A program made the position numbers and the translations under genes. DNA of 64,000 bases from Ascidiella aspersa (taxonomy: Eukaryota), in contig OZ004607.1 of NCBI GenBank assembly GCA_963924565.1, forward strand, positions 30,628,001 to 30,692,000, written 5' to 3'. The notes beneath the pieces are model-generated. The model was given only the letters and a program-made list of their open reading frames with translations, was not told the origin of the DNA and ran no database searches. Of this stretch, positions 11,804 through 48,451 are shown piece by piece. Every line of letters begins with the position of its first letter. The first letter of the stretch is position 1.

Positions 11804-14800
11804 ATGCGTTGGACTGCTGTCGCTGTTTTACTGGGGATAGTTCGGATGGCCCCAGCTTTTGAAACGGCCAAGGAACTCAATGAATGGGTTCCGTATTACG
11901 GTATGTAGACAAATTGTTTTACGATCACGTTAGTTTCCAGTAAATAGAAATTGTGTATACCAGAAGTCACCAAACTAGGGTCCGCGGGCTGGATCGGTCC
12001 CTCAGATTTAATAAAACCTGTGTACGGCAAAATTTCTTGATAAAGAAGAAGTACAGTAATTGTACTCGGCTGTAATTGCAAATTAAATTTAGGTGAAATT
12101 GTAAACTGAGAAACAATTTATTAAAGCATACTACCATTTTTGTTGCATGTTTATTTGGGTTACCTTCGTTTTACGATATTCAAGTTAATTTTGTTAGACA
12201 TGCACAAAGTTTTATCCAGCCCGAGGCGATCAGGCTTTACAGCTATCCCACCTTTATGAAAAACGTTTGGTGACCCCTGGTGTACATCAATAATATTTGT
12301 ATTGCAATTTGAAACGTATATTTAATAAAGGCAATACGTCCTCTTAAAGGCCCGATTTACGTTACAGCTTCCGCAAGTGTAGGCAGTCGAGAACAGTCCG
12401 TAATTGAAAACATTTTTTCTTCGTTTAACTTAGTTTGTATTGAGTGAAAAACATTTAAAGTCAGCCTAAATAAATTAATCGCAAGACAAAGGCGAAATGT
12501 TTGTCGGTTGTACACCGTTATGCTAAACGCACTTTCCATATATAAGTGTAACTTAACATTCAAAAAAAATTGGACAGAGTTTTTTAGTTAAACTTTTAAG
12601 AGCATTTACTTTTTAGTTAGGCGCTGTTTGGGACTGCACTTCTTTCGTGCCTGGAGACACTTTTGAGGGAACCATACGACCATACTATGTGCTAATATGC
12701 GGATATACCAAACATTTTCTCGCTGCACCTGACTAAATTCTAATTTCAACACGAAACGTGCAACATAGCACTATACAGAGATTATAATTGTGCAACTAAG
12801 TGTCTAAGGTACTTAAAAAGGCGTCATTTTAAAAAATGATTAAGGCCTATACCAAAATATTGTAAAAAAAAACTTATTCCATTAGAAAAAAGGGTACCTG
12901 AGAAAGCCTTCGATAACCCTAACCACAGATTAAACGATTTTCGTTGTGTTAAACATAATGTCACGTTTCAGTTTTTAGTGCATCCCTCAACTGCAACCAT
13001 ATTGATCATTCGTATAATATCTTAATTGTTTTATGTAGATTGGTGCAACGCCGTTCGACTGGATCCTAGCCGGAATTCTATCAACTGCTTCTGTCCATCA
13101 AGAACTAAAGATTTGAACTTCTACTTTTCAACACTTAGCGGTCTAGAGAAGCCCACAGCGATTCCGAAAAGATGGCTTTGTGACGGACGGAATGATTGCC
13201 CTGACTATTCCGACGAGATAAGAGAAGACTGCCTCTGTTCTCCTCAAGAATATCAATGCGGGTGCTCACTTCGAACCCAGCACTGCTATCACGGCCAGGG
13301 GTGCTACAGCGAGGGTGACATTTGCAACGGTCGTTTGGATTGCATGGACGGCACAGACGAGCTAAACTGCACTTGTCCAAGTGGGACTTTTCGCTGTGCG
13401 TGCCAAGATAACAACACGTGCGCCTACCCGGAAATGTGCATCTTGGAGCATCAGACCTGAGACGGGAAAAGCGATTGTTCCGACGGAAGCGACGAAGCCG
13501 ACTGCCAATGTGCCGGGGAATTTTCTTGCGGTTGTCGCTACGTGAACGGTAAATGTCAAGATCCAACCAGCTGTATCCCGATGTCATCTAAATGCGACGG
13601 GACTAACGACTGTGTAGACGGCAGCGACGAACACGACTGCCAGTTTGCACAGCGTCAGTTCTACTGCGCATGCGCAAGAAAAGGATTATGCGTCTCACCC
13701 AATCCGTCCTACATTCCTTGGGAGTTTGTTTGCGACTTTGACAACGACTGCGGCGACTGGAGTGACGAAATTAACTGCCCGTGTACCGATGGGGAGTTTA
13801 TGTGCGATTGCAACAGACTGGGCTGCAGCACTTCGCCTGGCTGTGTCAACCTAAATTATTTCTGCGACGGAATAGACGACTGTGGCGATTGGAGTGATGA
13901 ACTTGACTGCATGTTTGACTATAAACGGTTTAATTGCGAGTGCTTTACAAACAACCAAACCTGCTCGGGCAACGTCGCAAGTGTTATCTTGGACAAAGTT
14001 TGCGATGGAATCTACCAATGCTCCGATCACTCCGACGAACGCTCCTGTAAATGCCAGGCGCCCAAGTTTCAATGCAAGTGCGCTAATGTTGCTTCCGATG
14101 CTTGTGCTGGAGATAATTGGTGCATCAGCAGCGATAAGGTATGCGATGGATACACTGACTGCTTGGACGGAAGCGACGAGTTGAACTGCACCTACCCCTA
14201 CTATGCTTTCACTTGCACTTGTGCTTTCGACCTTATATGCACAGAGAGGTTTGTGGCCGTAGGATACTGGCTTGAATGCAACGGTAATAACGAGTGTGGA
14301 GATTGGAGCGACGAAGATACGTGTTTATGCGGCGCTGGCAAGTTCATGTGCGACTGCTATAAAACATCACCAATCACATGCGACGTTAACAATGGATGCT
14401 TGGAACAGGAGAAAGTGTGCGATCACATAAACGACTGCGGGGATTGGAGCGACGAACGGAACTGCAACTTTTTCCAATGTGCTTGTAGTTCGTCAAACGT
14501 TTCAGCAGTTTGCTATGCCGAAAGCGTAAGCGGGGAGAGACGCTGTGACCTTGTGAACGACTGTGGCGATTGGAGCGACGAAAACAACTGCACTTGCCCA
14601 CCAAACAGCTTCGAGTGTCCGTGCAACTTTCCAGGATGTGGAGCCGGGCCCGGATGTGTATCAGCAAACTTTATGTGTGACGGGTTTAACGATTGTGGAG
14701 ATTGGAGTGACGAAGCGAATTGCTCGTGTCCCGCTGGAGAAACTCCTTGTGAGTGTTATGCTAGAGAAAATAAGACTTGCCATTTCAAGAACGGATGCCT

Positions 14801-17291
14801 TCAGCCTTGGCAAGTTTGCGACGGATTGAACGACTGTGGCGACTGGAGTGGAGAACTGGAATGCAATTGCACACACGGTCAAGTCAAATGCGGCTGCCTA
14901 TTCAACGACTCCGGTTGCGTTTCCAACAAGGGTTGTATTGATTGGTCTTTAGTGAATAATGGGATAGCCAACTGTTTCGGCGGTGACGACGAACCTTGTG
15001 TGACCAATTTTAACTTCTGTGATAACAATTGTCAGACAAAGGCCATGTACTGCCCTGATTTACAAGCAAAAGAAAAAATGTTGCAGTACGAAAATGCTTC
15101 GCTGACGCATTGCTTTCCTGTGTTGGCTAAAACGTTTATCAACAACACCATAGGAGAAAAAACACCAGAGTGGGCCTGCATTTCAACCACGTGTGGGGCA
15201 GAGAACGCTGGCTGCAAAAAACCGTTTGTTTCCGATAACAAGGAAGTTATAATAGCCAACCTGTTTTGTACTGGTAATAGCGAATGCAGCGACTGTAGTG
15301 ATGAGGCATTCAACCTTCCAGGATTTAAATGCGCCACCGGTTATTCGACGTTTACCTGCGTTCTTCCCCAAATAAATTTGTACGACGACATTGCACAGTG
15401 CTCCGACGGATCCGATTTGTGTTTCGCTGACGGGACGATGAACTGTTTTCAATGCTTTGATAAGCGACTTATAATCTCTCCCAAGCAGGTCTGCGACGGT
15501 GTTGTGGACTGTTACGATCTCTCAGACGAGTGCTTTTGCGCGAATCAAACTGCCTGCAACGATGTGCGCGGGATATCCAAGACCGTTTGCCCGCCCGGTG
15601 AACTATATTGCAACGAAACTGTTGGATGCGTGGAGGAAACCACTGTTCTGTGCAATTGGGATTACAAATGCACAAACAGCACGAACACAGTGGCCTGCAT
15701 CAATTCGGAAAGGCAGAAAACAATCAGTTGTGTCGCTATTTCAGGCCCAATTGAAGCTGTGCTGTGCGACGGCCGGCCGCAATGCAACGACTTGTCCGAC
15801 GAATGTGAAAACTGCCCGACTAAGCCTTGGTTTTGCGACGATGCCTGTCGCTTGTATTATCCCATTGGAGACCGATACTGCGACGGGCAAAATGATAGTG
15901 TTTCGGGTTATATTGACAAACCGTTTTGCCCCAATGGGTTCGACGAAAAAAACTGCTCCAAAAGGTTCTATTGCGCAAACGGTGTATCAGTCAGCATCGA
16001 TGTCAACAATGTATGTGATGGTATAATTAACTGTGAAAACGGAGAAGACGAGACTGAGGCACGTTGCGCTGATAGACGCTTTTACTGTGGCGATAAAAAG
16101 CCGATATCAGTGGCGAAAAGCCAGGTGGAGGATGGCAAGTGGGACTGCGCTGACGGAAGCGACGAATGCCCGCCGCAAACCGACAAAGTAACTGTGTTTT
16201 CCTCGCAATACGAGCTGATTGGTAACAAAATTATTCTTGCCGTATTTTGGATTATGGCGCTGTTATCAATTGCCGGTAATATCGTTGTGTTCGCCACCAC
16301 AGTAAAAAATATACTGGTTACCGACAAAATGTCAAAAGTGTTGCAATATAACTCGTTATTCGTACTCAACCTTTCCGTGTCCGATTTTTTAATGGGCATT
16401 TACCTTTTAACGATTTGCATTAAAACGGCCCAATTTTCTGGTTCGTATTGCTTCCATGACAAACCATGGCGTACGAGCAGATCGTGTTCGTTTTTAGGCG
16501 TCCTTGTCGTTCTTTCAACTGAAACATCCGTGTTCATAATGACATTTATGACCACATTCCGCCTTGTCACAATATTTCGACCTTTTATAACCTCCACGCT
16601 CAAAATAATCTGGGGAAGGTTGGCAGTGGCAGCGTCCTGGATTTTGGCAATTTTAATCGCCACTTTTCCTTTAATGTTTCCGACCTCTGGCTACTTTGTG
16701 TCCGGGGTTTGGTTTCCGAACTACTTTTACAAATCTGACCAAGTAGATAAGGCAGATGTGAACACCCTTGCATTAAGAATGGGACAAACAAACATTTCCT
16801 CATGGTCGAACACTTTGAAGTTCATTGAATCCAAGCTTCGATACTTGCCCATAAAAGGGGACATAGGTTACTACGGTGAGACGAGCGTGTGCATGCCTCG
16901 ACTTTTCGTAAACGTCGGTGACGCTGGTTGGGGTTTTTCCACTTTTCTTATCCTTCTTAATTTTCTTCTCTTTCTCTACATGGTCGTAAGCTACGTCGTC
17001 ATTTACCGCCTTAGCACCAGTGGAGCTGGAAAGTTTAGTAATAAGCGTTCGAAAAAGATGCAAAGCCGCATAACGCGCCTCATTCTAACCGATTTTGCTT
17101 GCTGGGTTCCGCTTTGCACACTGGCCTTTATACAACTTTCCGGTGTCGATTTACCCATCGTGGTGTACGCTATCAGCGCCGGAATTTTGCTTCCCATTAA
17201 CAGCGCAATCAACCCATTGCTGTATTCCGACGCCATAATTGGCGTGTTGTATTCTGTGTTTTCTTGTGGTAAACGTCAGTCCTCCCAATAG
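11804..17291 (+). pseudogene. LDLa-repeat GPCR (RXFP/GRL101-like, no LRRs) copy A; exons 11804-11900 and 13039-17291; in-frame TGA at 13458-13460
   Basis: Exon 1 encodes signal peptide MRWTAVAVLLGIVRMAPA...WVPYY (possible upstream ATG at 11792), followed by a phase-1 GT-AG intron. ORFs 13026-13460 and 13542-17291 share a frame and are separated by TGA where copies B and C have TGC (Cys). The tail is also shortened (TCG to TAG plus a deletion relative to B). Confidence 0.8.
11961..12279. mobile_element. hAT-type MITE in the intron of receptor copy A (same insertion as 30685-31006 in copy B)
   Basis: TIRs CAGAAGTCACCAAAC / GTTTGGTGACCCCTG; TSD GTGTATAC / GTGTACAT. Confidence 0.72.
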
Positions 17292-18094
17292 GACGCTTCT
17301 GTAATTGGAACGGCTTACAATATCTTTCCTTTTCTGAACAACTACGAGTGTTCCAGAATATTTCAATTATCGATTTGTGGATGTACTTAATGCTTTTGTA
17401 TATTGTTTTTCTGAGTTTCACTGCACTTGGTCTGTTTTTGTTCCCATTACTTTTGTAAATATATATGCATAGAACAGATTTGTCCCGATTAATTAAATTT
17501 TAAACTGCATAAGCTTTTTGTAATATTTCTTCACTGTTTCTTAGTTTTATCGTATTGTTTTTTTTACTAAGTTGTGCAATGCTTGTTCTGTGTTTCAATT
17601 CATTGTATATAAATTTTATAACAGCAATGTTTTGTTATTACTCGTTCTAAACGTGAAATACTTCAATGACGATGAGCAAATGCTTGACTTTGTGAAAAAT
17701 GCTGTTTTTTTATCACTTTTCCATTATTAAGGAAGTCTCATTGTAAAAACTTACAAAGCTTGTTTATTTGTTGTAATCTTGTTGGAATGCTTGTATCATT
17801 ATTTTGAGTCGATTTGAAATATACTTGTATACGGGACTTTTTTTGCTTGCAATGTATTACATTACTCGAATTCTTCTTTTAATGAATTCACTTTGATTGT
17901 AAGAACTTTTACATACATACCCCTCCTCTCTCAAATTTTAAAATAACGACATTACATCCACACAAAATCCGCCTACATGAAAATCTGTTGGGATTAAGTT
18001 TCTGCGTAATTAATTTAGGCAAGTTTTGTAAATTGAATCTAATATAGGTTCCCAATCGTCATTCAACTCACATAGTATAGTTGTTTTCCAAATT

Positions 18095-18430
18095 ACATTT
18101 TAGTTTTTGAATGCCTCTATCTGTAATGTTTTGTCGCTCAATCTTTCTGTAAAACTTATAGCCTTTAAACCAGTGTAGCGTAGGAACAAATTAATATATC
18201 TTTGTAATAAATGCCTGTAGGTATTTTAGGTATACGATTTTTGTCTGAGCTAATTATACACTTTTATCAAATAAATGTACAAATTTTAACACACCTTTAT
18301 TCCTTTAGATTACTAGACGAGTACTTTATTGTTTGTCAGTATAGCATAATGCAAGGTGTAAAAGCATTGTAGGCTTGCATGCAATTCATGCTATAACATT
18401 TGTATCGAAAAAGCAAAGACATATTTAGTA
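18095..18430 (+). repeat. Diverged direct repeat of 7900-8380
   Basis: Same shared blocks as 7900-8380; begins right after homology to the copy B 3' flank ends (~18060). Confidence 0.72.
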
Positions 18431-25484: not shown

Positions 25485-28400
25485 TTACATAGGGGTGGCA
25501 GCAATGCTTTTTGAATATGTGGTATTCGCGGTGCCGCCCCTGCTCGATGTCAAAGCGTCCGATTGGGAGGATTGACGTTTACCACAAGAAAACACGGAAC
25601 ACAACACGCCAACTATGGCATCGGAATACAGCAGGGGGTTAATCGCGCTGTTAGTTGGAAGCAAGATTCCGGCGCTGATAGCGTACACCACCATCGGCAA
25701 ATGGACACCGGAAAGTTGTATAAAGGCCAGTGTGCAAAGCGGAACCCAGCAAGCAAAATCAGTAAGAATAAGACGCGTTATGCGGCTTTGCATCTTTTTC
25801 GAACGCTTGCTACTGAACTTTCCAGCTCGTCTGGTGCTCAGGCGGTAAATGACCACGTAGCTTACGACCATGTAGAGAAAGAGAAGAAAATTAAGAAGGA
25901 TAAGGAAAGTGGAAAAACCCCAGCCAGCGTCACCGACGTTTACGAAAAGTCGAGGCATGCACACGCTCGTCTCACCGTAGTAACCTATCTCGCCTTTTAT
26001 GGGCAAGTACGGAAGCTTGGATTCAATAAAATCCAAAGTGTTCGACCATGAGGAAATGTTTGTTTGTCCCATCGTTAATGCAAGGGTGTTCACATCTGCC
26101 TTATCTACTTGGTCAGATTTGTAAAAGTAGTTCGGAAACCAAACCCCGGACACAAAGTAGCCAGAGGTCGGGAACATTAAAGGAAAAGTGGCGATTAAAA
26201 TTGCCAAAATCCAGGACGCTGCCACTGCCAACCTTCCCCAGATTATTTTGAGCGTGGAGGTTATAAAAGGTCGAAATATAGTGACAAGGCGAAATGTGGT
26301 CATAAATGTCATTATGAACACGGAGGTTTCAGTGGAAATAACGACAAGGACTCCCAAAAACGAACACGACCCGCTCGTACGCCATGGTTTGTCATGGAAG
26401 CAATACGAACCAGAAAATTGGGCCGTTTTAATGCAAATCGTTAAAAGGTAAATGCCCATTAAAAAATCGGACACGGAAAGGTTGAGTACGAATAACGAGT
26501 TATATTGCAACACTTTTGACATTTTGTCGGTAACCATTATATTCTTTGCTGTGGTGGCGAACACAACGATATTACCGGCAATTGATAACAGCGCCATAAT
26601 CCAAAATACGGCAAGAATAATTTTGTTACCAATCAGCTCGTATTGCGAGGAAAACACAGTTACTTTGTCGGTTTGCGGCGGGCATTCGTCGCTTCCGTCA
26701 GCGCAGTCCCACTTGCCATCCTCCACCTGGCTTTTCGCCACCGATATCGGTTTCTTATCGCGACAATAGAAGCGTTTATCAGCGCAACGTGCCTTAGTCT
26801 CGTCTTCTCCGTTTTCACAGTTAATTATACCATCACACACATTGTTGACGTCGATGCTGACTGATACACCGTTTGCGCAATAGAACCTTTTGGAGCAGTT
26901 TTTTTCGTCGAACCCAAGGGGGCAAAACGGTTTGTCAATGTAGCTCGAAGCGGTATCATTTTGCCCGTCGCAGTATCGGTCTCCGATGGGATAATACAAG
27001 CGACAGGGATCGTCGCAAAACCATGGTTTTGTCGGGCAGTTTTCACATTCGTCGGACAAGTCGTTGCATTGCGGCCGGCCGTCGCACAGCACAGCTTCAA
27101 TTGGGCCTGAAGCAGCGACACAACTGATTGTTTTCTGCCTTTCCGAGTTGATGCAGGCCACTGTGTTCGTGCTGTTTGTGCATTTGTAATCCCAATTGCA
27201 CAGAACAGTGGTTTCCGCCAGGCAACCGACAGTTTCGTTGCAATATAGTTCACCGGGCGGGCAAACGGTCTTCGATATCCCGCGCACATCGTTGCAGGCA
27301 GTTTGATTTGCGCAAAAGCACTCGTCTGAGAGATCGTTACAGTCCACAACACCGTCACAGACCTGCTTGGGAGAGATTATAAGTCGCTTATCAAAGCACT
27401 GAAAACAGTTCATCGTCCCGTTAGCGAAACACAAATCGGATCCGTCGGAGCACTGTGCAATGTCGTCATACAAATTTATTTGGGGAAGAATGCAGGTAAA
27501 CGTCGAATAACCGGTGGCGCATTTAAATCCTGGAAGGTTGTATCGCTCATCGCTTGAGTCGCTGCATTCGTTATTGCCGTCACAAAATAGATTGGCTATT
27601 ATAACTTCCTTATTGTCGCAAACAAAAGGTTCTCTGCAGCCAGGGTGCCCTGCCCCACACGTGGTTGAAATACAGGCCCACTCTGGTATTTTTTCTCCTA
27701 TTGTGTTGTTGATAAAAGTTTTACTCAACACCGGAAAGCAGTGCGTCAGCGAAGCATTTTCGTACTGCAACATTTTTTCTTTGGCTTGTAAATCGGGGCA
27801 GTACATGGCCTTTGTTTGGCAATTGTTATCGCAGAAGTTAAAATTGGTCACACAGGGTTCGTCGTCACCGCCGAAACAGTTCGCTTTCCCATTATTCACT
27901 AAAGATCTATCGATACAACCCTTGTTGGAAACGCAACTCGAGTCGTTGAATATGCAGCCGCATATGACTTGCCCGCTTGTGCAATTGCATTCTAGTTCTC
28001 CACTCCAGTCGCCACAGTCGTTCAATCCGTCGCAAACTTGCCAAGGCTGAAGGCATCCGTTTTTGAAATGGCAAGTCTTGTTTTCTCTAGCATAACACGC
28101 GCAAGGAGTCTTTTGAGCGGGACACGAGCAATTTGCTTCGTCGCTCCAATCTCCACAATTGTTAATCCCGTTGCATACGCGGTTTTCTGATACACATCCT
28201 GGTCCGGCTCCACAGCCTTGATAGTTGCAAGAACACTCGAAGCTTTTCGGCGGGCAGGTGCAGTTGTTTTCGTCGCTCCAATCGCCACAGTCGTTCACAA
28301 GGTCACAGCGTCTCTCCCCGCTTACGCTTTCGGCATAGCAAACTGCTGAAACGTTTGACGAACTACAGGCACATTGGAAAAAGTTGCAGTTCTGTTCGTC

Positions 28401-31157
28401 GCTCCAATCCCCGCAGTCGTTTAAGTGATCGCACACTCTCTTCTGTTCCAAGCATCCGATGTTAACGTCGCATGTGATTGGTGATGTTTTATAGCAGTCG
28501 CACATGAACTTGCCAGCGCCGCATGAACACGTGTCTTCGTCGCTCCAATCGCCACACTCGTTCTTACCGTTGCATTCAAGTCGGTAGCCTACGGCCAGAT
28601 ACCTCCCTGTGCAGGAATCGTTGGAAGCGCAAGTGCAAGTGAAGAGATCACTGGAGGGGTAGGTGCAGTTCAACTCGTCGCTTCCGTCCAAGCAGTCAGT
28701 GTATCCATCGCATACCTTATCGCTGCTGATGCACCAATTATCTCCAGCACAAGCATCGGAAGCAACATTAGCACACTTGCATTGAAACTTGGGCGCCTGG
28801 CATTTACAGGAGCGTTCGTCGGAGTGATCCGAGCATTGGTAGGTTCCGTCGCAAACTTTGTCCAATGTTACACTTGCGACGTTGCCCGAGCAGGTTTGGT
28901 TGTTGGTAAAGCACTCGCAATTAAACCGTTTATAGTCAAACGTGCAGCCAAGTTCGTCACTCCAATCGCCACAGTCGTCTATTCCGTCGCAGACATATTT
29001 CTTTCGGTTGACACATCCAGGTGAAGTGTTGCAGCCAAGTCTGTTGCAATTGCACACAAACTCTCCCTTGGCACACGGGCAGTTAATTTCGTCACTCCAG
29101 TCGCCGCAGTCGTTGTTAAGATCGCAAACAAACTCCCAAGAAATGTACGAGGGATTGGGTGAGACGCATGATCCATTACTTGCGCATGCGCAGTAGAACT
29201 GGGGCTTAGCAAACTGGCAGTCGTGTTCGTCACTTCCGTCAGGGCAGTGGTTAATTCCATCGCATTTTAACATTAACGGAATACAGCTGGTTGGTTCTTG
29301 ACATTTGCCGTTTACGTAGCGACAACCGCAAGAAAATTGCCCGGCACATTGGCAGTCGGCTTCGTCGCTTCCGTCGGAACAATCGCTTTTCCCGTCGCAG
29401 GTCTGATGCTCCAAGATGCACACTTCCGGGTAGGCGCACGTGTTGTTATCTTGGCACGTACAGCGGTAAGTCCCACTCGGACAAGTGCAGTTGAGCTCGT
29501 CTGTGCCGTCCATGCAATCCAAACGACCGTTGCAAATGTCACCCTCGTTATAGCACCCCTGCCCATGATAACAGTGCTGGGTTCGAAGTGGGCATCCGCA
29601 TTGATATTCTTGAGGAGAACAGAGGCAGTCTTTCTCGTCGGCTTTGTCAGGGCAGTCATTTGCGCCGTCACAAAGCCATCTTTTTGGAATCGCTGTTGGC
29701 TTGTTTCGACCGCTAAGTGTTGAAAAGTAGTACTTCAAATCTTTGGTTCTTGATGGACAGAAGCAGTTGATAGAATTCCGGCTAGGATCCAGGCGAACGG
29801 TGTTGCACCAATCTAAATACAGAACCAACTTCAGATGTTAAACGTATAAACAATATGGTTTTAGTTGAGGTACCCTTTTCCTTTTCGTTTATTTTGTATA
29901 AAATGTTAACTTGTTTTTACGATGTTTTGGTGTACTGTAGACCTTAATATTGTAGACCTTTAAAAATATGTTTGCATTATTTATGTCATTTACGAAGATC
30001 TTACGAATAATCGGTAAATATTCTATTTTTTTAACCTGGGCAACGTCGGGTATTTCGTCTAGTCATCTATAAAGACAAGGTCTTTTTGAAATACCTTAGT
30101 CACTTAGTTTCACACCTAATATTTTCGGTATCGTTAAGCTATGTTGCACGTTTCGTGTTGAAGTAAATATTTGTTTAGGCGCAGCAAAATATTGTTTGGT
30201 ATATTCGCATATTAGCAAGTAATACTGTCCTCGGTACCCATAAAAATGTCTCTAGGTCCGAAAGCAGTGCAGTCCCAAACAGCGCAAACTAAAAATCTAA
30301 CGCTGTTAGCAGTTTAACTAACAAAGTCTGTCAAGTTATTTTCCGAAGGTAAAGTTATGCTAATAATATTTATATATTATGGAAAGTGCGTTTAGCAAAA
30401 CGCTGTAAGCCTGACAAACATTCGCATTCGCATAGGTAAATGATGCCGATACCTATATTAGCCGTATTGTGTTTAATTTATTTAGGCTGGCCGATGGTTT
30501 GAATGTTTTTCGCTCAACACAAACCAAGTTGAACGAAGAAAACCTATTTTTAATTAACGTACTGTTCTCAAATGCCTATACCTGTGGAAGCTGTAACATA
30601 AATCGGGCACATTAAAGTGAACATATTGCCTTTGATGGTTATCCGTTTCAAATCGCAATACAAATATTAATTATTGTTGTACACCAGTGGTCACCCAGTT
30701 TTTTCCTGAACTAAAGGATCGGATACCTGGAAGCCTGATCACCTCGGGCCGGATAAAAGTTTGTGTCAAACTTTATTGACTTGTTGATCGCTCAACGAAG
30801 CTAATATAAAAAAAGATGGAACCGTAACTGTAAAAAGTGTAAAGCGCCTTAATCGTCCAGTTTACAAAGTCACCACAATGTGGTTTGGAATTGCATCAAA
30901 GAACGTTTTAACTGTAGTTCATCTATTTTAAGAAAATATGCCGCACGCCGGTTTTATTAACCCTGGGGCCCGATCCAGCCCGCGGACTCTAGTTTGGTGA
31001 CTCCTGCTGTACACAATTACTATTTAGTGCAAACTAACGTGATCGTAAAACAATTTGTCTACATACCGTAATACGGAACCCATTCTTTGAGTTGCAAGGA
31101 CCCAGATGGGGCCATCCAAACTATTCCCAGTAAAACAGTAACAGCCGTCCAACGCAT
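25485..31157 (-). CDS. LDLa-repeat GPCR (RXFP/GRL101-like, no LRRs) copy B, intact ~1472 aa; exons 31157-31067 and 29812-25485
   Basis: Signal peptide MRWTAVTVLLGIVWMAPSGS; ~22 CxxxxDCxDxSDE-type LDLa modules; LGR-type 7TM motifs GN (TM1), NLSVSDFLMGIYLL (TM2), WRTSxxC, YYGETSVCMP, DFACWVP and NSAINPLLY; uninterrupted 4.3-kb exon. Confidence 0.92.
30685..31006. mobile_element. hAT-type MITE in the intron of receptor copy B
   Basis: TIRs CAGTGGTCACC / GGTGACTCCTG; TSD TTGTACAC / CTGTACAC; same position as the MITE in copy A. Confidence 0.72.
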
Positions 31158-32689
31158 TATTAAGTAGTCGAAAAGTTCTGCATAGAGAAAGAGCATTAGA
31201 TCCCTTATTTCATTTCCCTTTAATCTTGTGAACCCTTATACAACGATATCCTACATTGCCAAAATACAATCAGACCTTGCTAAAACATTCATTTATATTT
31301 ACCGCAGAAAAAGCGCACAGTCGGAGGATGCTGTTACTCCATTCATTTAAATATTAATGTTTGTATGCACAGACTGTCATTTGTAACGTTTTTAGCTAAA
31401 TACTCGCATGCATTTTGAGTCATAAGTGCCAATGAATAGGTGGAGTCGATATTCGTGTATTTGTTTCTACTAAAACAGTATTCGTTCAGCGTTTCATGAT
31501 AGTGCATGTCACATATATAGATATAAGAGCTCGAACTACTGATATATTAGGATTTATATGTTAAATCACACAACCCGGAATACCCAATCTGGAAGTTTTT
31601 CGTGTTACTCGTTACATATTTAATTTAGGAGCATGAGCAATAGTAACTTGCATCCTAAATTGTAGCAAATCCGACTGATTTTATTTAATGATCACTTTCA
31701 CAAGCCGTGGATATATTGCAGGGTCTAATCTATAGTGCTTCTTAACTTTTTAATTATAGCATCTATATTATATTTAGTACCTAGTTATTACGAATAACTT
31801 CGCTAAATAATAGTTTAGTCTAGCGCCTACAGCCCGCTATGGAAGATTGTCAGGTGCGAAACAGATTATTTTGGCTAAAATGCAAATTGAAAAAAAAAGG
31901 GCATTTCAAGTTTTTTTCTTTCAATTTCGGCTTAGATCATTAGGCAACGTGTACAATAAAGATTATTTACCATTAAGGATATTTTATAAAAACTTGCAAG
32001 GAATTCAAGAGAATACTCGCTCTCGGTTTGTCTCCCAGATGCGCCATAACGTAAAAAGTTTAAGAAACTCTTGCTTGGTCAGTGCAAAGTTACTCGTAGA
32101 CGGTATACCAGAAAGCGCAAATTGACGGAATAATAGGGACAAGCATAATCAGTTCAAAATGATGTCAGTCGTATAATATAGACTCTCCTAGTTTTACGTG
32201 GCGTCATAAGTAAGCAATATTAAGAGAAACACACAGTCGGTTATATTTTTTATAAAGTTTAGGTTAAAAAAGTGCTACTTTTAATATAAAAGCTGCATTA
32301 TAAAGATACCATCGATTCGCTCAAAGCGAAAAAAACGCCTTTACATATGTTAAGTTACATAAACTTGCAGGATTGAGATGAAACTGACAATGACTCAACA
32401 TACTGAAAACAAAAATGTTTGCATTTAGGTAGTTAAAATAGACAAATACTTTTGCATTTATATAATAAAACGGCCGATACAATGATATAAAATCAAAAAC
32501 ATATTTGTCATGATGGCTGAACAAGCACGAATATTAATTTACCTCCTTCTAAACGCAAAACGACAAATAGAACATTTTGTATTAATGATTTATTTTGCTT
32601 CGTTTGATAATGAATCAAGTACGACCTAAATCCGCCATTTTTTAAGGCAATTTCATGAAGATTAAAGCTTAGCATTGCGAATGCTGGAT

Positions 32690-40348: not shown

Positions 40349-42744
40349 CAGTGTTGCAATGACTTAAATCATTGACTTGACTTAAGTGCACTTAAGTCAC
40401 TATTTTTTAAATGACTTGACTAGACTTAAGTCTGTTGGGCAAAAGGACTTTAATTAAGTCTGTTGGGCAAAATGACTTTACTTTAGTCTTTTGGACAAAT
40501 GACTTGGGTTGAAATAAGTTTTTTCATGCAGCATTTTTTATAAAATTCGGTTATTTATCTTTATTTTCGCACATAAAACAATTTGATTGCTTTACGTTCT
40601 GTTTTTTTTTACTGGAGGTATTGCACAAAATCGGACGAGAATTTTTGTGGCCTGCCCATCCTGGGCCAGATAAGTGTTAGGGTATATGATATATAAATTA
40701 TAATTGAAAATTTGGTTGCCTATGTGTATAGTTAAATAAAAAGACAGGCAAAAGCAACTTAGATTCATTTTTCTTCGGATCATAAACTTTTTCGGATCAT
40801 AAAGGTATTACAGTTTAAAGAATTGCATCATAAAACAAATCACGAACCCCGCTTTGCCTATTCGAAATCCGGACCTTTAAAATAATGTCTGACATTTTCA
40901 GGTTAGAGTTAGAACGAAATTCGTGAAAAATTGTCGGTTTAATTTTGGCAAAACGTTTTAATTAAATGTGGAATGAATAGTAGACCTGTAAACACATAAA
41001 TATAGATAGCATATTTGAACGGTTTGATTAATCCTTAATTTAATTTCAACATTTTAAGTTTGAAAATCACTTCCTATCGTTTTGTCATACAAAACAGATA
41101 TGTCAAAAACCGTTATGGGCATTTATGTTGAATGGCAAGGTGTTTGGCTTGAAAGGACTGTCGAACCCACTGCTGCAGATGGATGTAAATATATCGGCTC
41201 AGTTGCTATCTTTTCACACCTGTTGGTATGGAGCTGGATATAAAACGTCACTTTTTATATTCATGGTATTCGGCCGCTAGTGGATATGCCAGGATTCACG
41301 AAACAAACGTTAACGATAGTTACCCTTCCGAAAGTTATATTTGTTGTAATAATTTGAAAAACAAGACTGTTCGCGTAATGACGTCATTTGACATCAGATT
41401 TAATATGTTGGAATCGCCATCGAAATGCAGTTTCGGACATCTATATTATATTATTATCACAGGAAACTTGTAAAGGGTAATTTCACTTTCATAAGCACGA
41501 TAAAATTATTCGTTGTACCCCTTTTGTTTGGATAAGATTTTTTTTTGGAGAAGGCCCTTCTACTTAATGGTACAACCGCATTGTAAAATCATTTGGTAAG
41601 TAAATTTCATTAATAAAATTATAGTTTTTTTGCGGGGAGCCAATGTTGCCCCTCCAACCATATTGAAAAAGGTCTAAATATATAGCAAAAAACATAAGCT
41701 AGATCGATATAGAGTTACGGATGGACAGAAATTCGTACCGTATTACCAAACTTTATAACGCGAGTTATTGTTACAGATATCGCGCAAATCGCCTTGAAAA
41801 TGTCACGGAAGATTTCGCTTTTTTCATAATTTGACTAAAAGCGATGTGTCGTCCAATGTTGTTGTACGGCGTTTCGAGATTTTAAGATTTTTCTATGCAG
41901 AAATCGTGACGTATGCGTGCAGGCTCACCGCGAACGCTTTCCTTCCCCCAGCATGTAGCCTATACACGCACGTTTTGGACATGTTTAGGCCAGAAGATGC
42001 AATTCTGTTTCCGGTCATGCTGTGACAAGTTTGAGGTGAGCAGAGTTGACGCGGCAAACCTTTTTGGCTCACTTTGCCTTTTTACGCAACAAATCACGAT
42101 CGTTATGCAATTAGCGACACCTCGCACGCGGGCGTAATGCCAGCTGACACCGTGCGAGACACAGCTTGCAAAAGCGTACCGCGCCGCCATTCCATAAGGA
42201 AAACCATGCACGAGAGTGGGCAAACTTATTGGCAAACTCCCCACCTTATGACTCCCGCTTCGGAATTCGACTGTCAACGGAAGCCCTTTTTGCAACAAGA
42301 GTGATGGCAGTTGCAAACTTACGTCATTGACTTGACTCTTTTTTTGTTATAATGACTAGACTTGACTTAAGCCTTTCGAACGAATAGCGTGACTAGGACT
42401 TTAGTCAATAAGTCAACTGACTTAATTTAAAGAATTAAGTGTTCTCATTTAACATTTTATTATAAATTTAGCTGGTTGTCTCAAGTTTTGCCCATAAAAC
42501 GACTAGATTGTTGCAGGTTGCTTTTTGTTTTGTTTTTGAGTTGAATATTACTCATATTCGGCGATTTAACTTTTCAAATCCATTTTTTTTTATCAAAGAT
42601 TCGATTTGGGCTTGCTCGAATAATGACTTCAGTGGGACTTGGGCAACTAAAGACTTGCAGTTGGAGTTGACTTGGACTTAAGTTATATCACAAAAGACTT
42701 GACTGGGTCTTAAGTGCTTTTATATTGGCTTGTTTACAACACTG
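40349..42744. mobile_element. ~2.4-kb non-autonomous DNA element with GACTT subterminal repeat arrays
   Basis: Ends CAGTGTTG / CAACACTG; dense GACTT(G/A) repeats at 40360-40505 and 42330-42715; no transposase ORF and no recognisable TSD. Confidence 0.55.
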
Positions 42745-43510
42745 CACGAATAGAAAGGACCAGGTTTTTTTTAAGGTTTGGTTTGGGTGACCGCTAAGTA
42801 GTTTTAAGAGACCGCAAGTGTTTCATTTAAATACCAAAATGTTGCAAGTCCAAAATTTGGGAAACCTCTGGAGAAATCCCCAAAACACCTAAAAAAAACA
42901 CTGGAAAGGACTATTATTTTTATTTGATAACCTACCGATTCCTTCTTGTGCATTCAGCCTAGCGTGAAAGTCGTTAGTGCGGCATAGGTGAAAGGGTAAA
43001 CGTGCTGAGAGCGCCGTGACTCTTAACCGGGTTCTTTTTTTGCATTTCCTTTCGTTTGCACGACATGCCAAACTATAAAGTTGCCATCTCGCTGTTACGC
43101 TGTCGTCGTTTTGCAACTTAGTAAATTAAGAATGTGCGATTATTCAAGCGGTTAACCACGTGGCTGTGCGGTTAATCACGACAATCTGCTGTTAATAACG
43201 CGATTTTCCTGGGTGACATTAAGGCCACCCCGCGTATGAACACGAAATAGAAAATGTCGCTCGTTTGTGAACTCAACAACAACACCAAAAGCAAAAAATC
43301 ACTTGGCAGAAACTTATTTTTAGTTGAACTAAGGGTATATAGTGAACCTACCAGTAAATGAAAGAAAAAGCAAGTGCAACTGTGTGTAAGTTGCAATCAG
43401 GGGGTGAATAAATATACGCAGTACCTTTAAATGTTCGGCATGTTTCTTTACTTGTAATCTGGACAAGAATGGAATTCTTCTATAGGCACGGCAATAATGA
43501 ACATTATAAT

Positions 43511-43636
43511 CGGGGCTGGAGAGCCGGAGCCGGAGCTGGAGCCGGAGCTGGAGCTGGAGCCCGGAGCCCTGAGCTAAGCATTTTCTCTTTTCTGGAGCCG
43601 GAGCTAATGCTATTTTACGGTGGCTCCCCAGCCCTG
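43511..43636. mobile_element. Short GGAGCC-repeat hAT MITE immediately upstream of receptor copy C
   Basis: TIRs CGGGGCTGG / CCAGCCCTG; perfect 8-bp TSD ATTATAAT on both sides; internal (GGAGCY)n. Confidence 0.85.
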
Positions 43637-43700
43637 ATTATAATACGAGGTTTTCCTGTATGTTATCGCGTTTTTATTATTATTTCAGAGCCTCTTCGGA

Positions 43701-46700
43701 ATGCAGTTAATTATTTTGTGTTTTCTGCTCTTAGCACAGTTTGCTGTGGCGACAACCAGGACGGATGGCAATCCACTTCGCGAGTGGCATTCTTACTACG
43801 GTGATTTGGTTTCACTCGATGCAATCATATTATTATTTAGTCTCAGAATTTTAAACGAAACTCGATTACTGTCGTAAATTCAACCGGTTAATTTTAAATA
43901 CGACCGTTTTTACAAAGGATGAGACGAGTGTTGGAAGACGGGTATAACGCCGGTTTAATTTTTGGAAATAAAACATCTAAAAATAAAAACTTTCTGGGTT
44001 TTGATGTAAATATTTAACATTTTGTTTTTCGACAGAATTGGTGACGTTTTTTATAAAATGCCTTGACATGCAAAAAAAATTTATGCGTTTTGATGGTAGG
44101 AAGTATTTATTAAAATGAATTAATTTTTTCCTCTGCTGGTCCTTTTGCGGTTAAAGGTAAAATAAGTTATTGGTTGATGCGACCCTTCAACAATAAAATA
44201 ACAGTATCAAAATAATGCAACGGCTCTAACAATATGTCGTTTGATTGCAGACTGGTGCACTGAAATGAGATTACATCCAGATCGCAACGTTTCCAACTGT
44301 TACTGTCCAGCGAAAACCAAAGATCTTTCCTACCACTTTTTTACTATACGAAAGGCCGACGCTCAACAAACCATTCAAAAGAGATGGATGTGCGACGCTA
44401 AACACGATTGTAATGATGGGTCGGATGAAAAAGACTGTCTATGCTCACCTGACCAATATCAATGCGATGCCCACTGAGAACCCAGCACTGCTATCACGGA
44501 CAGGGGTGCTACAGTGAGGGTGACATTTGCAACGGTCGTTTGGATTGCATGGACGGCACAGACGAGCTAAACTGCACTTGCCCAAGTAAAACTTTTCGCT
44601 GTGCGTGCCAAGATAACAACACGTGCGCCTACCCGGAAGTGTGCATCTTGGAGCATCAGACCTGCGACGGGAAAAGCGATTGTTCCGACGGAAGCGACGA
44701 AGCCGACTGTCAATGTGCCGGGGAATTTTCTTGCGGTTGTCGCTACGTGAACGGTAAATGTCAAGATCCAACTAGTTGCATCCCGTTGTCATTTGAATGC
44801 GATGGGATTAACGACTGCGCAGACGGCAGCGATGAATTAGATTGTGAATTAGTCATGATTCAGTTTTACTGCGCGTGTGTAAGGAGAGGAACGTGCGCTC
44901 AGCCTTTCCCTAATTCGGTGCCGTGGAAAGACGTGTGCAACTTTCGCGACGACTGTGGCGACTGGAGCGACGAAGTAAATTGTCCGTGCGCCCTAGGCGA
45001 ATTCAAGTGCGACTGCAACGCGAAAGGCTGCGGCGTTTCGGCGGGCTGCGTCAACCAGAGGAGACAGGTGTGCAACGGTTTCGATGACTGCGGCGACTGG
45101 AGCGATGAAACCGACTGTGCGTTCAAGAAGCAGCGCTTCACTTGCGACTGCTTCGCGCAGAACCGCAGCTGCGCCTATGGAGTGGCGAGTGTGCGGCAAG
45201 ATCAGGTGTGCGACGGCACCTTTCAGTGCTCGGACCACTCGGACGAGCGCAACTGCACTTGCAATGCATCCAAGTTCAGGTGCAAGTGCGCTGATGCCGG
45301 GGTAGGGCAGTGCGAAGGCAAGCGATGGTGCGTTCCCCGCGATGCGGTGTGCGACGGCAGGAACGACTGTGGCGACTGGAGCGACGAAGAAGGCTGCGGC
45401 AGCTGCGGAGCGAATTCCTTCCGCTGCGACTGCTACAAAACTTCCCCAATTAAATGCTCGCGCAACTACGGCTGCTTCAGGCCCAGCCAACGCTGCGACC
45501 ATTTCGAAGACTGCGGCGACGGGAGCGACGAACGCGGCTGCGACTTTTTGCCTTGCGCGTGTCGCTCGTCGTCCTCGCAGACGCCGTGCTACACCTGGAG
45601 CGTGGCGACCGGCAAACGCTGCGACCTTGTGAACGACTGCGGCGATTGGAGCGACGAGAACAACTGCACCTGCCCGCGCTTCAGCTTTGAGTACCCGTGC
45701 AACTTTCCAGGATGTGAAACTGGACCTGGGTGTGTTTCGGTTATCAAGCATTGCGACGGTTATAACGACTGCGGCGATTGGGCCGACGAGGCCGGGTGTG
45801 TTTGCGCGGTTGGCACGAAACCGTGCAAATGCTACGTGGAGGCGAAAAAAACCTGCGCAGACAAGCAGAGCTGTGTCGCCGACAGTAAGGTATGCGACGG
45901 CAAAAACGACTGCGGCGATTGGAGCGACGAACTGGGCTGCCAGTGCGGCGCCGGTCAGGTAAGGTGCGGGTGCATTTTTGCCGACACCAACTGCACCTCT
46001 AACAAGAGGTGCATAGACGTGTCAATGGTCAATGACGGGACGCCTGACTGCGAAAAAGGCGAGGACGAACCGTGCACGATGAGTTGGCACTTCTGCGATG
46101 GGCGCTGCAAGACCACCGCTATGTACTGTGCCGACTCTGACGCCAAGGCGAGAATGCTGCAGTATGAAAACGCCTCGCAGACGCACTGTTTTCCCATGAT
46201 GACCAAAACTTTTATAAACGACACCATAGGGAAAAAAGAACCGGAGTGGGCTTGCGTTTCAAGCGCGTGCCGCTCACAAAATCACCTTGGCTGTATAACA
46301 CCAGTCCGCTGTGATAATAACAAAGTTATAATAGCGAACGCTTTCTGCGATGGAATTGACCACTGTTTTGACAGCAGTGATGAATGGTATAACGACGTTG
46401 GGTTTAAATGCTCCACCAGGCATTCGTCTTTCAGCTGTGTTCTCCCTCAGTCAAACCTATACGACGACGTGGCGCAGTGTTCGGACGGCGCCGATTTGTG
46501 TTTCGTCAACGGGACCATGAACTGTTTTCAATGCTTCGACAAACGCCTGGTGATCTCGAGCGCACAAGTGTGCGACGGCGTGGTGGATTGCCTAGACCTC
46601 TCCGACGAGTGTTTCTGCTCGGATCACACGGTTTGTGACGAGGTTCTTGGCGATTCCCGGTCTCTCTGCGATCCCGGGCAAGTTTACTGCAACGACGACT

Positions 46701-48451
46701 TGGGATGTGTGGAACAGTCGGTGGCGGTTTGCAACGCTAACTACAAATGTACCAACCAGGCCAACACGGCGTGGTGCACGCCCGGCCAAAATATTAACAA
46801 GAAGGTAAGTTGCGTTAATTTTGGTGGTCGGATAGAGGCTACGATGTGCGACGGGCGACCGGAGTGCAGTGACTTATCCGACGAATGTGGAAATTGCACC
46901 TACAAGCCGTGGTTTTGCGACGACCCTTGTCGCCTGTATTATGCGATAGGTGGTCGATACTGCGACGGTCAGAACGACATGGCCTACCGTTTCATCAACA
47001 ACCCATCGTGTCCCGAGGGCTTCGACGAGAAAAACTGTTCCCAGCGATTTTATTGCAGTAGTGGTATTTCCATAAGTATTGACGTCAACAATGTATGTGA
47101 TGGTACAATTAACTGTGAAAACGGGGAAGATGAGACTAAGGCTCGTTGCGCTGATAAACGCTTTTACTGTGGCGATAAAAAGCCGATATCAGTGGCGAAA
47201 AGCCAGGTGGAGGATGGCAAGTGGGACTGCGCTGACGGAAGCGACGAATGCCCGCCGCAAACTGACAAAGTAACTGTGTTTTCCTCGCAATACGAGCTGA
47301 TCGGCAACAAAATTATTCTTGCCGTGTTTTGGATTATGGCGCTTGTTTCCATTGCTGGCAACCTCGTTGTGTTTATAAGGACAGCGAAGGACATTTTGTC
47401 GCCAGAACGACAGTCCATACAGTTTCGCTATAACTCGTTGTTCGTGCTAAACCTTTCGGCATCCGACTTCTTAATGGGCGTTTACCTTTTAGCGGTTTGC
47501 ATTAAGGCCGCGCAGTTTTCTGGTTCGTATTGTTTCCACGATCACCTTTGGCGCACAAGTCGAGCGTGCTCTGTTTTGGGCGTCGTTGTCGTTCTTTCCA
47601 CCGAGACTTCCGTGTTCATTATGACATGCATGACCGCATTTCGCCTTGTGACCATATTGCGACCATTCGTAACCGCCACCGTTTCGATAACCTGGGGAAA
47701 GTTGGCGGTGGCAGCGTCCTGGATTTTGGCAATTTTAATCGCCACTTTTCCGTTAATGTTCCCGACCTCTGGCTACTTTGTATCCGGGGTTTGGTTTCCG
47801 AACTACTTTTACAAATCTGACCAAGTAAGTAAAGCTGACCTTAATACACTCGCTTTTAGAATGGGTCAAACGAACTCCTCTTCATGGTCCGATACCAAGG
47901 AGTATGTTCAAAGAAAACTCCCGTATTTGCCGATTAAGGGCGACATTGGTTACTACAGCGAAACCAGCGTGTGCATGCCTCGCATCTTCGTGAACGTCGG
48001 CCAAGCTGGCTGGGGCTACTCGACTTTTCTAGTCACCATAAATTTGTTTCTATTTAGTATCATGGTATTGGGCTACGGCCTGATTTATCGGCAAGGGACG
48101 AGAAACACAGAGAAGACGAGCAAGCGCACTAAGAAAATCCAACGCAAAATAACGCGCCTTATTCTGACTGATTTCGCTTGCTGGGTTCCGCTTTGTACAC
48201 TAGCTTTTATACAGCTTTCCGGTGTGGAATTTCCAGTTGTTGTGTACGCCATCAGCGCTGGAATCTTGCTTCCCACCAACAGCGCCCTTAACCCCTTGAT
48301 ATATTCCGACACAATCAGTGAGATCCTGGAAAGGCTGCACTTTTGCCATAAGCGCCAAACCGCTGTTAAACTAATAAATCCGCCTGCAGTGATTTCCGGC
48401 TCTCCCAACAACTCAGGTTCTTCTGGATCGCATCAAACCACGCCCATTTAA
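43701..48451 (+). pseudogene. LDLa-repeat GPCR (RXFP/GRL101-like, no LRRs) copy C; exons 43701-43800 and 44251-48451; 1-bp deletion at ~44466
   Basis: Exon 1 encodes signal peptide MQLIILCFLLLAQFAVATT...WHSYY with the same phase-1 intron. CAATGCGATGCCCA here versus CAATGCGGATGCCCA in copy B gives a frameshift. The remainder (ORF 44462-48451) is open through the 7TM domain. It could be an intact gene with an assembly error. Confidence 0.75.

What the first reader, a model, noticed from the sequence alone, without database searches (positions are those of the whole stretch)
11804..48451. Cluster of giant LDLa-array GPCRs that lack the leucine-rich-repeat domain
Seen: three paralogs with a signal peptide, ~21-22 LDLa modules joined directly to an RXFP-like pre-TM1 segment (ECP...VFSSQYELIG) and an LGR-type 7TM, with no LxxLxLxxN repeats. 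Established: RXFP1/2 have one LDLa plus LRRs; GRL101 has about 12 LDLa plus LRRs; the LRRs provide the main hormone-binding surface. LDLa-bearing GPCRs are known to be expanded in ascidians, so the family may not be wholly new. Inference: these receptors must bind ligand through the LDLa array, like a lipoprotein or scavenger receptor wired to a G protein, which suits environmental, immune or self/non-self recognition.
Basis: partly seen in the sequence, partly recalled or inferred. Interest (0 to 1): 0.85.

Follow-up and report, generated by a model that had tools for sequence, protein, structure and literature searches.

The report
Ascidian LDLa-array GPCRs without LRRs
Three neighbouring sea-squirt genes encode relaxin-receptor-like G-protein-coupled receptors whose outer part is a chain of about 20 LDL-receptor-type modules instead of leucine-rich repeats. 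This receptor type was already described in Ciona in 2008 and still has no known ligand; these are unusually long members of a very large family.

Summary
The span 11804-48451 contains three two-exon paralogs: A on the + strand, B on the - strand, C on the + strand. Each has a signal-peptide exon and one giant exon. The giant exon encodes 18 (Pfam) to about 22 (motif count) LDLa modules, a pre-TM1 hinge that aligns with RXFP1 and LHCGR, and an LGR-type 7TM. No LRR was found by Pfam, tblastn, motif scan, intron comparison or fold search.

Only B is intact in this assembly. A has a TGC-to-TGA change at 13458-13460. C has a 1-nt deletion at about 44466. dN/dS of 0.12-0.23 indicates both lesions are recent, polymorphic or errors.

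The architecture is not new. Kamesh et al. 2008 (PMC2396169) named it LDLRR-GPCR in Ciona: 1-10 LDL-A repeats, no LRR, relaxin-receptor-like TM, still orphan. They already proposed lipoprotein or protein-complex ligands.

What is added here:
- arrays of 18-31 modules in a 13-gene subfamily;
- at least 120 family members in this 309-Mb genome;
- a constant membrane-proximal stalk below a variable N-terminal array;
- conservation of RXFP1's activating ECL2 loop and hinge residues.

The scan also noted such arrays on other DNA of this genome. Expression could not be tested. Verdict: new members of a known kind, of moderate interest.

The parts
11804..11900 (+). Copy A exon 1: signal-like peptide (MRWTAVAVLLGIV...), ends in phase 1 before the GTATGT donor; an upstream in-frame ATG lies at 11750
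13039..17291 (+). Copy A exon 2: LDLa array, stalk, hinge (from 16194) and 7TM; stop TAG; C-tail 24 aa shorter than B
13458..13460 (+). Premature TGA in copy A at a conserved module cysteine (B and C have TGC; the flanking 18 nt are identical in all three)
   Evidence: no SECIS downstream
31067..31196 (-). Copy B exon 1: signal-like peptide (ATG at 31196 or at 31157 'MRWTAVTVLL...'), donor GTATGT
25485..29812 (-). Copy B exon 2: the only intact copy, 1442 codons plus TAA
27858..29812 (-). B N-terminal variable array: 14 LDLa modules (residues 1-652), alternating 8-Cys and 6-Cys forms; seven end in C-G-D-W-S-D/G-E and one has His at the aromatic position
26685..27857 (-). B membrane-proximal stalk (residues 653-1043): a 65-aa alpha/beta spacer plus about 7-8 canonical or degenerate LDLa modules. 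It is conserved in length across the genome's family, and its last module is 'RFYC..P.SV...VEDG..DC.DGSDEC'
27672..27857 (-). Small alpha/beta spacer domain inside the stalk; no Pfam hit, no fold match, not an LRR
26628..26687 (-). B hinge 'ECPPQTDKVT VFSSQYELIG' just before TM1; aligns with RXFP1 'CKPNTDGISSLENLL' and LHCGR 'CAPEPDAFNPCEDIMGY'
   Evidence: family conservation
25569..26624 (-). B 7TM bundle plus helix 8 (TM1 to H8 in the AF2 model); FRL in place of ERY/ERW, CWVP and NPLLY kept
25950..25985 (-). ECL2 motif G-Y-Y-G-E-T-S-V-C-M-P-R, aligned with RXFP1 Y556-L566 (the loop that fills RXFP1's orthosteric pocket); S-V-C and P are invariant in the family
43701..43800 (+). Copy C exon 1: signal-like peptide MQLIILCFLLLAQFAVA..., donor GTGATT
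44251..48451 (+). Copy C exon 2: LDLa array (one module fewer), stalk, hinge (from 47276) and 7TM; stop TAA
44466..44467 (+). 1-nt deletion in copy C (Gly codon GGA reduced to GA): frameshift with a stop three codons on; the remaining 1329 codons stay open

Best explanation
These are three tandem paralogs of the ascidian LDLRR-GPCR family. This family is a lineage-specific offshoot of type-C (relaxin-receptor-like) LGRs in which the leucine-rich-repeat domain is absent and the ectodomain is a chain of calcium-binding LDLa modules.

Shown here:
- Each gene has a signal-peptide exon and one giant exon.
- The ectodomain has two parts. The N-terminal array (about 14 modules in B) gains and loses whole modules between paralogs. 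The roughly 400-residue membrane-proximal stalk keeps a constant length across the whole family.
- The stalk joins through a conserved hinge to a 7TM that keeps R3.50, CWxP and NPxxY.
- The 7TM also keeps the RXFP1-type ECL2 loop (YYG..SVCMP) and the hinge hydrophobic pair (L-I, aligned with RXFP1 L402/L403).

Inferred:
- The N-terminal modules capture a protein ligand through lysine or arginine docking into the acidic, aromatic calcium pockets, as in LDLR, LRP and VLDLR.
- This changes how the stalk and hinge bear on ECL2, which acts as the built-in agonist in the orthosteric pocket as in RXFP1.
- The receptor then signals through a G protein, probably Gs by analogy with type A and C LGRs.
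- In this model the stalk would have to replace the autoinhibitory role that the LRRs play in RXFP1.

In this assembly only B is intact. A and C each carry one recent disabling lesion.
For: Domains: LDLa plus 7tm_1 only.

No LRR was found by any of these tests:
- Pfam at E<=10;
- tblastn with nine LRR-bearing LGRs against the whole window;
- LxxLxLxxNxL scan;
- A-B intron comparison: the only stretch near exon-level identity is the first ~100 nt of the intron, which has stop codons in all three frames;
- a 450-nt intron in C;
- fold searches.

Family: the nearest proteins are Ciona, Phallusia and Clavelina PF00057+PF00001 proteins at 40-50% identity. The family was published as LDLRR-GPCR.

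7TM affinity: PDB sequence hits are LHCGR 9e-22, RXFP1 3e-21, then TSHR and FSHR. Foldseek's top 34 chains are all LGRs. The ML tree joins the ascidian clade with scallop RXFP1-like and oyster LDLa+LRR receptors (SH-aLRT 100), apart from type A/B.

Hinge and ECL2: residue-level alignment to RXFP1, with their functional roles given. The family invariants are S361, V362, C363, P365 and C228.

Selection: dN/dS is 0.23 for A-B and 0.12 for B-C.

Module turnover is confined to the N-array.
Against: Two of the three copies are broken as assembled.

E3.49 is Phe, and the residue matching RXFP1 L566 is Arg (L566D abolishes RXFP1 signalling). The RXFP1 mechanism may therefore not transfer unchanged.

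RXFP1 without its LRRs is constitutively active. An LRR-less receptor could be ligand-independent.

Several stalk modules have lost calcium-cage or cysteine positions.
Confidence: 0.6

Rival explanations
1. These are ligand-independent or environment-gated receptors. Without the autoinhibitory LRRs the 7TM is constitutively activated by its own ECL2. The LDLa chain then tunes activity in response to Ca2+, pH or shear, or controls trafficking, rather than binding a specific ligand.
For: RXFP1 lacking its LRRs signals at 70% of Emax through ECL2 and hinge L402/L403. Both elements are conserved here. LDLa folding is calcium-dependent (established knowledge).
Against: Eight B modules keep an aromatic residue at the lysine-pocket position of the acidic motif. 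The N-array evolves by module gain and loss under purifying selection, which suits ligand recognition. A family of 120 or more genes is hard to explain by a single physical cue.
Confidence: 0.15
2. These are endocytic scavenger or cargo receptors. The LDLa array takes up lipoproteins or protease-inhibitor complexes as LRP and megalin do, and the 7TM serves mainly as a membrane anchor and arrestin-dependent internalisation module.
For: The ectodomain model matches megalin/LRP2, LDLR and VLDLR arrays. The lipoprotein-ligand idea was already raised in 2008.
Against: There is no EGF or YWTD propeller for acid release. The 7TM microswitches, ECL2 loop and hinge are conserved under stronger constraint than the array, which points to signalling.
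Confidence: 0.1
3. The cluster is largely decaying. A and C are pseudogenes and B may be unexpressed, so the 'system' is a by-product of birth-and-death turnover in an expanded family.
For: A has a premature TGA and C has a frameshift. Three other subfamily members are split into two ORFs.
Against: Each broken copy has only one lesion, and 1276-1329 codons remain open beyond it. dN/dS is 0.12-0.23. B is intact. The lesions could be allelic or assembly errors.
Confidence: 0.1
4. The gene-model is wrong: an unrecognised LRR-coding exon makes these ordinary GRL101-like (LDLa+LRR) receptors.
For: None found. NCBI labels some Ciona homologs 'GRL101-like'.
Against: LDLa array, stalk, hinge and 7TM are one uninterrupted exon, so nothing can be spliced in between. 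The only intron precedes the array and carries no conserved coding island. All LRR searches were negative. Annotated homologs in four ascidian species also lack LRR Pfam domains.
Confidence: 0.03

Closest known systems
Ciona LDLRR-GPCRs (Kamesh, Aradhyam & Manoj 2008, BMC Evol Biol 8:129; PMC2396169)
   Same: Tandem LDL-A repeats at the N-terminus, no LRR, a rhodopsin-type TM most like INSL3/relaxin receptors, an ascidian lineage-specific expansion, and orphan status. The window copies sit inside this clade in the tree and share the conserved stalk, hinge and ECL2 motifs with Ciona proteins.
   Different: The Ciona members were reported with 1-10 repeats and about 14-30 genes. Here there are 18-22 modules (up to about 25-31 in a neighbouring gene), an 8-Cys/6-Cys module variant, a 13-gene 'giant' subfamily, and at least 120 family members in the genome.
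RXFP1/RXFP2 (type C LGRs)
   Same: 7TM homology. The hinge 'C-x-P-x-T-D ... hydrophobic pair' and the ECL2 'YYG...VC-[F/M]-P' both align residue for residue. LDLa modules are present.
   Different: There is no LRR domain, which is the relaxin-binding and autoinhibitory part. There are about 20 LDLa modules instead of one, and the last one lies about 10 residues from the hinge rather than at the far N-terminus. ECL2 is about 75-84 residues and structured. The motif is FRL instead of EKY/ERY, and Arg replaces L566.
GRL101 of Lymnaea and type-C2 LGRs (including the oyster LDLa+LRR proteins P0057/P0058)
   Same: Multiple LDLa modules on an LGR-type 7TM. These are the closest LRR-bearing 7TMs (E 1e-35) and the sister group in the tree.
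   Different: GRL101-type receptors keep the LRR block between the LDLa modules and the 7TM. These receptors do not.
LDL receptor family (LDLR, VLDLR, LRP1/2)
   Same: Arrays of calcium-binding LDLa modules with the D-x-S-D-E acidic cluster preceded by Trp. The predicted ectodomain matches megalin, LDLR and VLDLR arrays.
   Different: There are no EGF or YWTD beta-propeller domains, and no single-pass TM with an NPxY tail. Most N-terminal modules carry an extra cysteine pair or have swapped a canonical pair.

Membership tests
Ascidian LDLRR-GPCR (Kamesh et al. 2008) | One or more tandem LDL-A modules N-terminal to the 7TM | tested here: met
   Pfam PF00057 E 6e-50 to 6e-66; 16-18 stretches per giant exon
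Ascidian LDLRR-GPCR (Kamesh et al. 2008) | Absence of leucine-rich repeats | tested here: met
   No LRR by Pfam at E<=10, tblastn with 9 LRR-LGRs, motif scan, intron comparison or fold searches
Ascidian LDLRR-GPCR (Kamesh et al. 2008) | Rhodopsin-type TM region most similar to INSL3/relaxin-type LGRs | tested here: met
   PDB hits LHCGR and RXFP1 at about 1e-21; Foldseek top hits are all LGRs; grouped with type-C LGRs at SH-aLRT 100
Ascidian LDLRR-GPCR (Kamesh et al. 2008) | Clusters with the Ciona members rather than with LRR-bearing LGRs | tested here: met
   Best hits are Ciona, Phallusia and Clavelina LDLa+7tm proteins at 40-50% identity. The window clade is sister to a Ciona clade. The quick tree has limited outgroup sampling.
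LGR type C (RXFP1/2) | LRR ectodomain that binds relaxin-family peptides | tested here: not met
   No LRR detected
LGR type C (RXFP1/2) | Single N-terminal LDLa module tethered by a linker | tested here: not met
   About 18-22 modules; the last one abuts the hinge
LGR type C (RXFP1/2) | ECL2 loop (YYG..VCFPL) and hinge Leu-Leu used for activation | tested here: inconclusive
   The sequence is conserved as YYGETSVCMPR and YELIG, but F is replaced by M and L by R. Function was not tested.
GRL101 / type C2 LGR | Multiple LDLa modules followed by LRRs, then the 7TM | tested here: not met
   LDLa array present, LRRs absent
LDL receptor family | LDLa array combined with EGF/YWTD propeller, single-pass TM and NPxY tail | tested here: not met
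   Only PF00057 and PF00001 pass Pfam's cutoffs; the sole other whole-protein hit below E 0.01 is a sub-threshold PRKCSH-like match lying over LDLa modules; no EGF or Ldl_recept_b; seven TM helices
Functional G-protein-coupled receptor | Class A microswitches (R3.50, CWxP, NPxxY, TM3-ECL2 disulfide) | tested here: met
   R253, C433-W434-x-P436, N470-P471-x-x-Y474 and C228/C363 are invariant or at least 90% conserved in the family alignment; E/D3.49 is Phe
Functional G-protein-coupled receptor | Ligand-dependent G-protein signalling | not testable with these tools
   Needs a cell assay

The most novel reading that the evidence does not exclude
The giant LDLa-GPCRs are the long-array end of a repertoire of 120 or more genes. 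The repertoire turns over fast through tandem duplication, whole-module gain and loss, gene conversion and frequent null alleles. It would serve ascidians as a germline-encoded recognition system for foreign or self proteins (immune, allorecognition or chemosensory). It would read out through a G protein by an RXFP1-like self-agonist ECL2, which a conserved LDLa stalk, rather than LRRs, keeps in check.
Probability: 0.2. Interest if true: 0.8.

Novelty: new member of a known kind. Interest (0 to 1): 0.45.

Why it matters
[quoted passage not shown] This genome shows the family can reach well over a hundred genes, with arrays two to three times longer than those reported.

The receptors keep the exact ECL2 and hinge elements that self-activate RXFP1 while lacking the LRRs that restrain them. 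That turns a vague idea, an 'LDL receptor wired to a G protein', into specific experiments. It also offers a natural LRR-deletion series for understanding type-C LGR activation.

Tried and rejected
- Selenocysteine reading of A's TGA: no SECIS was found downstream, so this was rejected.
- Hidden LRR or other domain in the 104-residue gap of the stalk: AF2 gives a confident small alpha/beta domain. Foldseek matches only LDLa arrays. VIA-align wide gives nothing above Z 4.3. The ESM Atlas gives scores below 0.8. The domain is not an LRR and its fold is unassigned.
- Intergenic ORFs (17.3-25.4 kb, 31.8-42.3 kb and others): no Pfam hits.
- Literature searches for later work on the family, or for reports of its expansion in other ascidian genomes, found nothing beyond the 2008 paper.
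- A first regex for exon 1 in other paralogs failed. A second scan found the conserved exon in the sister clade only.
- The spliced exon 1 + exon 2 protein was never joined or sent to any tool. All searches used exon 2 by reference.
Full report
**What is there**

The window is AT-rich eukaryotic DNA with three GC-rich blocks. These blocks correspond to three very long open frames: 13461-17288 (+), 25488-29837 (-) and 44453-48448 (+). Pfam finds only Ldl_recept_a (E 6e-50 to 6e-66) and 7tm_1 in them.

Comparing the three copies shows a shared two-exon structure:
- Exon 1 is short. It encodes a hydrophobic signal-like peptide and ends '..YY' plus one G before a GT donor.
- Exon 2 follows an AG acceptor. 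It completes an Asp codon and then runs without interruption through the whole ectodomain, the 7TM and the tail.

Coordinates:
- A: 11804-11900 and 13039-17291.
- B: 31157/31196-31067 and 29812-25485.
- C: 43701-43800 and 44251-48451.

A related signal-peptide exon lies 360-640 nt upstream of the giant exon in sister-clade paralogs elsewhere in the genome. All searches used exon 2 by reference.

**Module count**

In B the ectodomain has 1052 residues with 145 cysteines. Strict anchors of the form C-D-G-x-x-D-C-x-D-x-S-D-E give 19 modules. Counting degenerate ones gives about 21-22. Pfam sees 11 stretches at E<=0.01 and 18 at a lenient cut-off. For A it sees 16 plus 2 upstream of the stop, and for C 17 plus 1. 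C lacks one 46-residue module.

**No LRR**

- Pfam reports no LRR family even at E<=10.
- tblastn with nine LRR-bearing LGRs against the whole window hits only LDLa and 7TM parts.
- An LxxLxLxxNxL scan finds no array in any frame of the gene spans. In protein B it finds only two chance matches inside TM helices.
- The only intron lies before the array. It is 450 nt in C. In the A-B comparison it is 36-81% identical, apart from its first ~100 nt (about 90%), against 80-95% in exon 2. That conserved stretch has stop codons in all three frames, so there is no conserved coding island.
- An AF2 model of B residues 600-960 (pLDDT 81.5) matches megalin/LRP2, LDLR and VLDLR arrays.
- The one non-LDLa stretch is a 65-residue alpha/beta domain at 27672-27857. 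It has no fold match above Z 4.3 and no Atlas lead.

**7TM and hinge**

The 7TM's best solved relatives by sequence are LHCGR (9e-22), RXFP1 (3e-21), a C. elegans LGR, TSHR and FSHR. An AF2 model of the last 520 residues (pLDDT 82) has LGRs as its top 34 Foldseek hits.

In a quick ML tree of 65 7TMs, the LRR-less ascidian clade (SH-aLRT 93) groups with a scallop RXFP1-like receptor and oyster LDLa+LRR receptors (100), apart from type A/B LGRs. Outgroup sampling is thin.

HMMER aligns 'ECPPQTDKVTVFSSQYELIGN' with RXFP1 'CKPNTDGISSLENLLAS' and with LHCGR 'CAPEPDAFNPCEDIMGY'.

**Known family**

Kamesh, Aradhyam & Manoj 2008 (PMC2396169) described 14 Ciona 'LDLRR-GPCRs'. These have 1-10 tandem LDL-A modules, no LRR, and INSL3/relaxin-receptor-like TM regions. 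The authors proposed lipoprotein or large-protein-complex ligands and noted ESTs mainly from blood cells.

Database homologs from Ciona intestinalis, C. savignyi, Phallusia and Clavelina all carry PF00057+PF00001 without LRR. They are 40-50% identical to B in the 7TM region, and some are named 'GRL101-like' or 'LRP1B-like'. I found no later functional work. But the architecture and the functional idea are both published.

**What is added here**

1. *Family size.* The window lies at G000:C1:30628001-30692000 in a 309-Mb assembly. A 7TM query gives 103 scored matches (312 candidates), all with E<1e-99. The back-translated ECL2 motif E-T-S-V-C-M-P occurs 123 times, against 0 for the reversed control. 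Copies lie in many tandem arrays.
2. *A giant subfamily.* Thirteen genes on five contigs form one clade (100) with A, B and C. Their exons run 1401-1907 codons with 16-31 acidic anchors. The gene just beyond the window's end has 25 Pfam stretches. Homologs from other species retrieved here reach at most 15 anchors, with a median of 5.
3. *Two-part ectodomain.* Whole-module indels occur only in the N-terminal array. The roughly 400-residue stalk keeps its length, and it is recognisable (32-66% identity) in distant paralogs. The last module ('RFYC..P.SV...VEDG..DC.DGSDEC') and the hinge ('FSS..E-[LM]-I') are conserved as far as Ciona.
4. *RXFP1 activation elements.* Erlandson et al. (bioRxiv 10.1101/2022.01.22.477343) showed three things. 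RXFP1's ECL2 (Y556, Y557 ... C563-F564-P565-L566) fills the orthosteric pocket. Hinge L402/L403 are essential. Removing the LRRs makes the 7TM constitutively active. In the alignment these positions read Y-Y-G-E-T-S-V-C-M-P-R and L-I here. S-V-C, P and the TM3 cysteine are invariant in 34 family members.

R3.50, CWxP and NPxxY are kept, but E/D3.49 is Phe. ECL2 is long (about 84 residues) and confidently structured.

**State of the copies**

- A has TGA at 13458-13460 where B and C have TGC, inside 21 otherwise identical bases. No SECIS follows.
- C has lost one G from a Gly codon at about 44466 and stops three codons later.
- Beyond each lesion, 1276-1329 codons remain open.
- A-B: dS 0.19, dN/dS 0.23. 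B-C: dS about 1.9, dN/dS 0.12.
- Low-dS tracts at codons 61-180 and 1021-1080 suggest gene conversion between C and A/B.

The lesions are therefore recent, allelic or errors.

**Mechanism**

Shown: the domain order, the conserved elements and purifying selection.

Inferred:
- The N-array binds a protein ligand through lysine docking. Seven B modules have C-G-D-W-S-D/G-E and one more has His at the aromatic position. The pocket logic comes from LDLR/RAP structures and is my own knowledge.
- The stalk and hinge gate the ECL2 self-agonist.
- The output is a G protein, probably Gs.

The main rival is a constitutively active or physically gated receptor. That reading follows directly from the RXFP1 LRR-deletion result.

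**Verdict**

The genes are new, unusually long members of a known orphan family within a very large expansion. The scan's first readers also flagged similar arrays on other DNA of this genome.

Noticed in passing
G000:C1:30696279-30700382 (L010/L036), about 1.3 kb beyond the window's end: A fourth paralog of the cluster has a 1907-codon exon with 25 Pfam LDLa stretches. It also carries an internal duplication of about 330 residues of the stalk unit (46% identity to B's stalk at L036:3853-4854, in addition to the copy at 4954-6024).
   Followed up: partly
window 27858-29812 (-): The N-terminal modules alternate between an 8-Cys form and a 6-Cys form. The 8-Cys form has an extra C-x-C ... C pair between canonical C2 and C3. 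The 6-Cys form seems to have lost canonical C1 and C3 while keeping the extra pair.
   Followed up: partly
window 44430-44800 and 47180-47360 versus copies A and B: Synonymous divergence between C and A/B falls from saturation to 0.13-0.29 at exon-2 codons 61-180 and 1021-1080. This indicates gene-conversion tracts; the first tract spans the site of A's stop codon.
   Followed up: partly
window 11901-12001 (+) and the matching part of B's intron: The first ~100 nt of intron 1 are 90-96% identical between A and B, while the rest of the intron is 36-81%. There is no open frame, so this may be a splicing or regulatory element or a conversion edge.
   Followed up: no
window 27672-27857 (-): A 65-residue cysteine-containing alpha/beta domain inside the stalk is predicted with pLDDT about 85-96. 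It has no Pfam, fold-library or Atlas match and is conserved across the family.
   Followed up: partly
L038, L039, L040 (G000:C7:24.545 Mb; C3:35.337 and 35.361 Mb): Three giant-subfamily members have the ectodomain (919-944 codons) and the 7TM (482-511 codons) in separate open frames. This means either an intron or a break just before the last modules.
   Followed up: no
window 53066-53138 (+): A tRNA gene (Rfam RF00005, 35.2 bits, above the gathering score).
   Followed up: no
window 60200-61681 (-): A single 494-codon open frame with a Major Facilitator Superfamily domain (MFS_1, E 9e-15) in a GC-rich block.
   Followed up: no
Genome G000, e.g. C2:35.36-36.69 Mb, C2:38.30-39.24 Mb, C6:0.09-2.44 Mb: Long tandem arrays of shorter LDLa-GPCR paralogs (861-1390-codon frames). 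Neighbours are nearly identical, with tree end branches of 0-0.02.
   Followed up: partly
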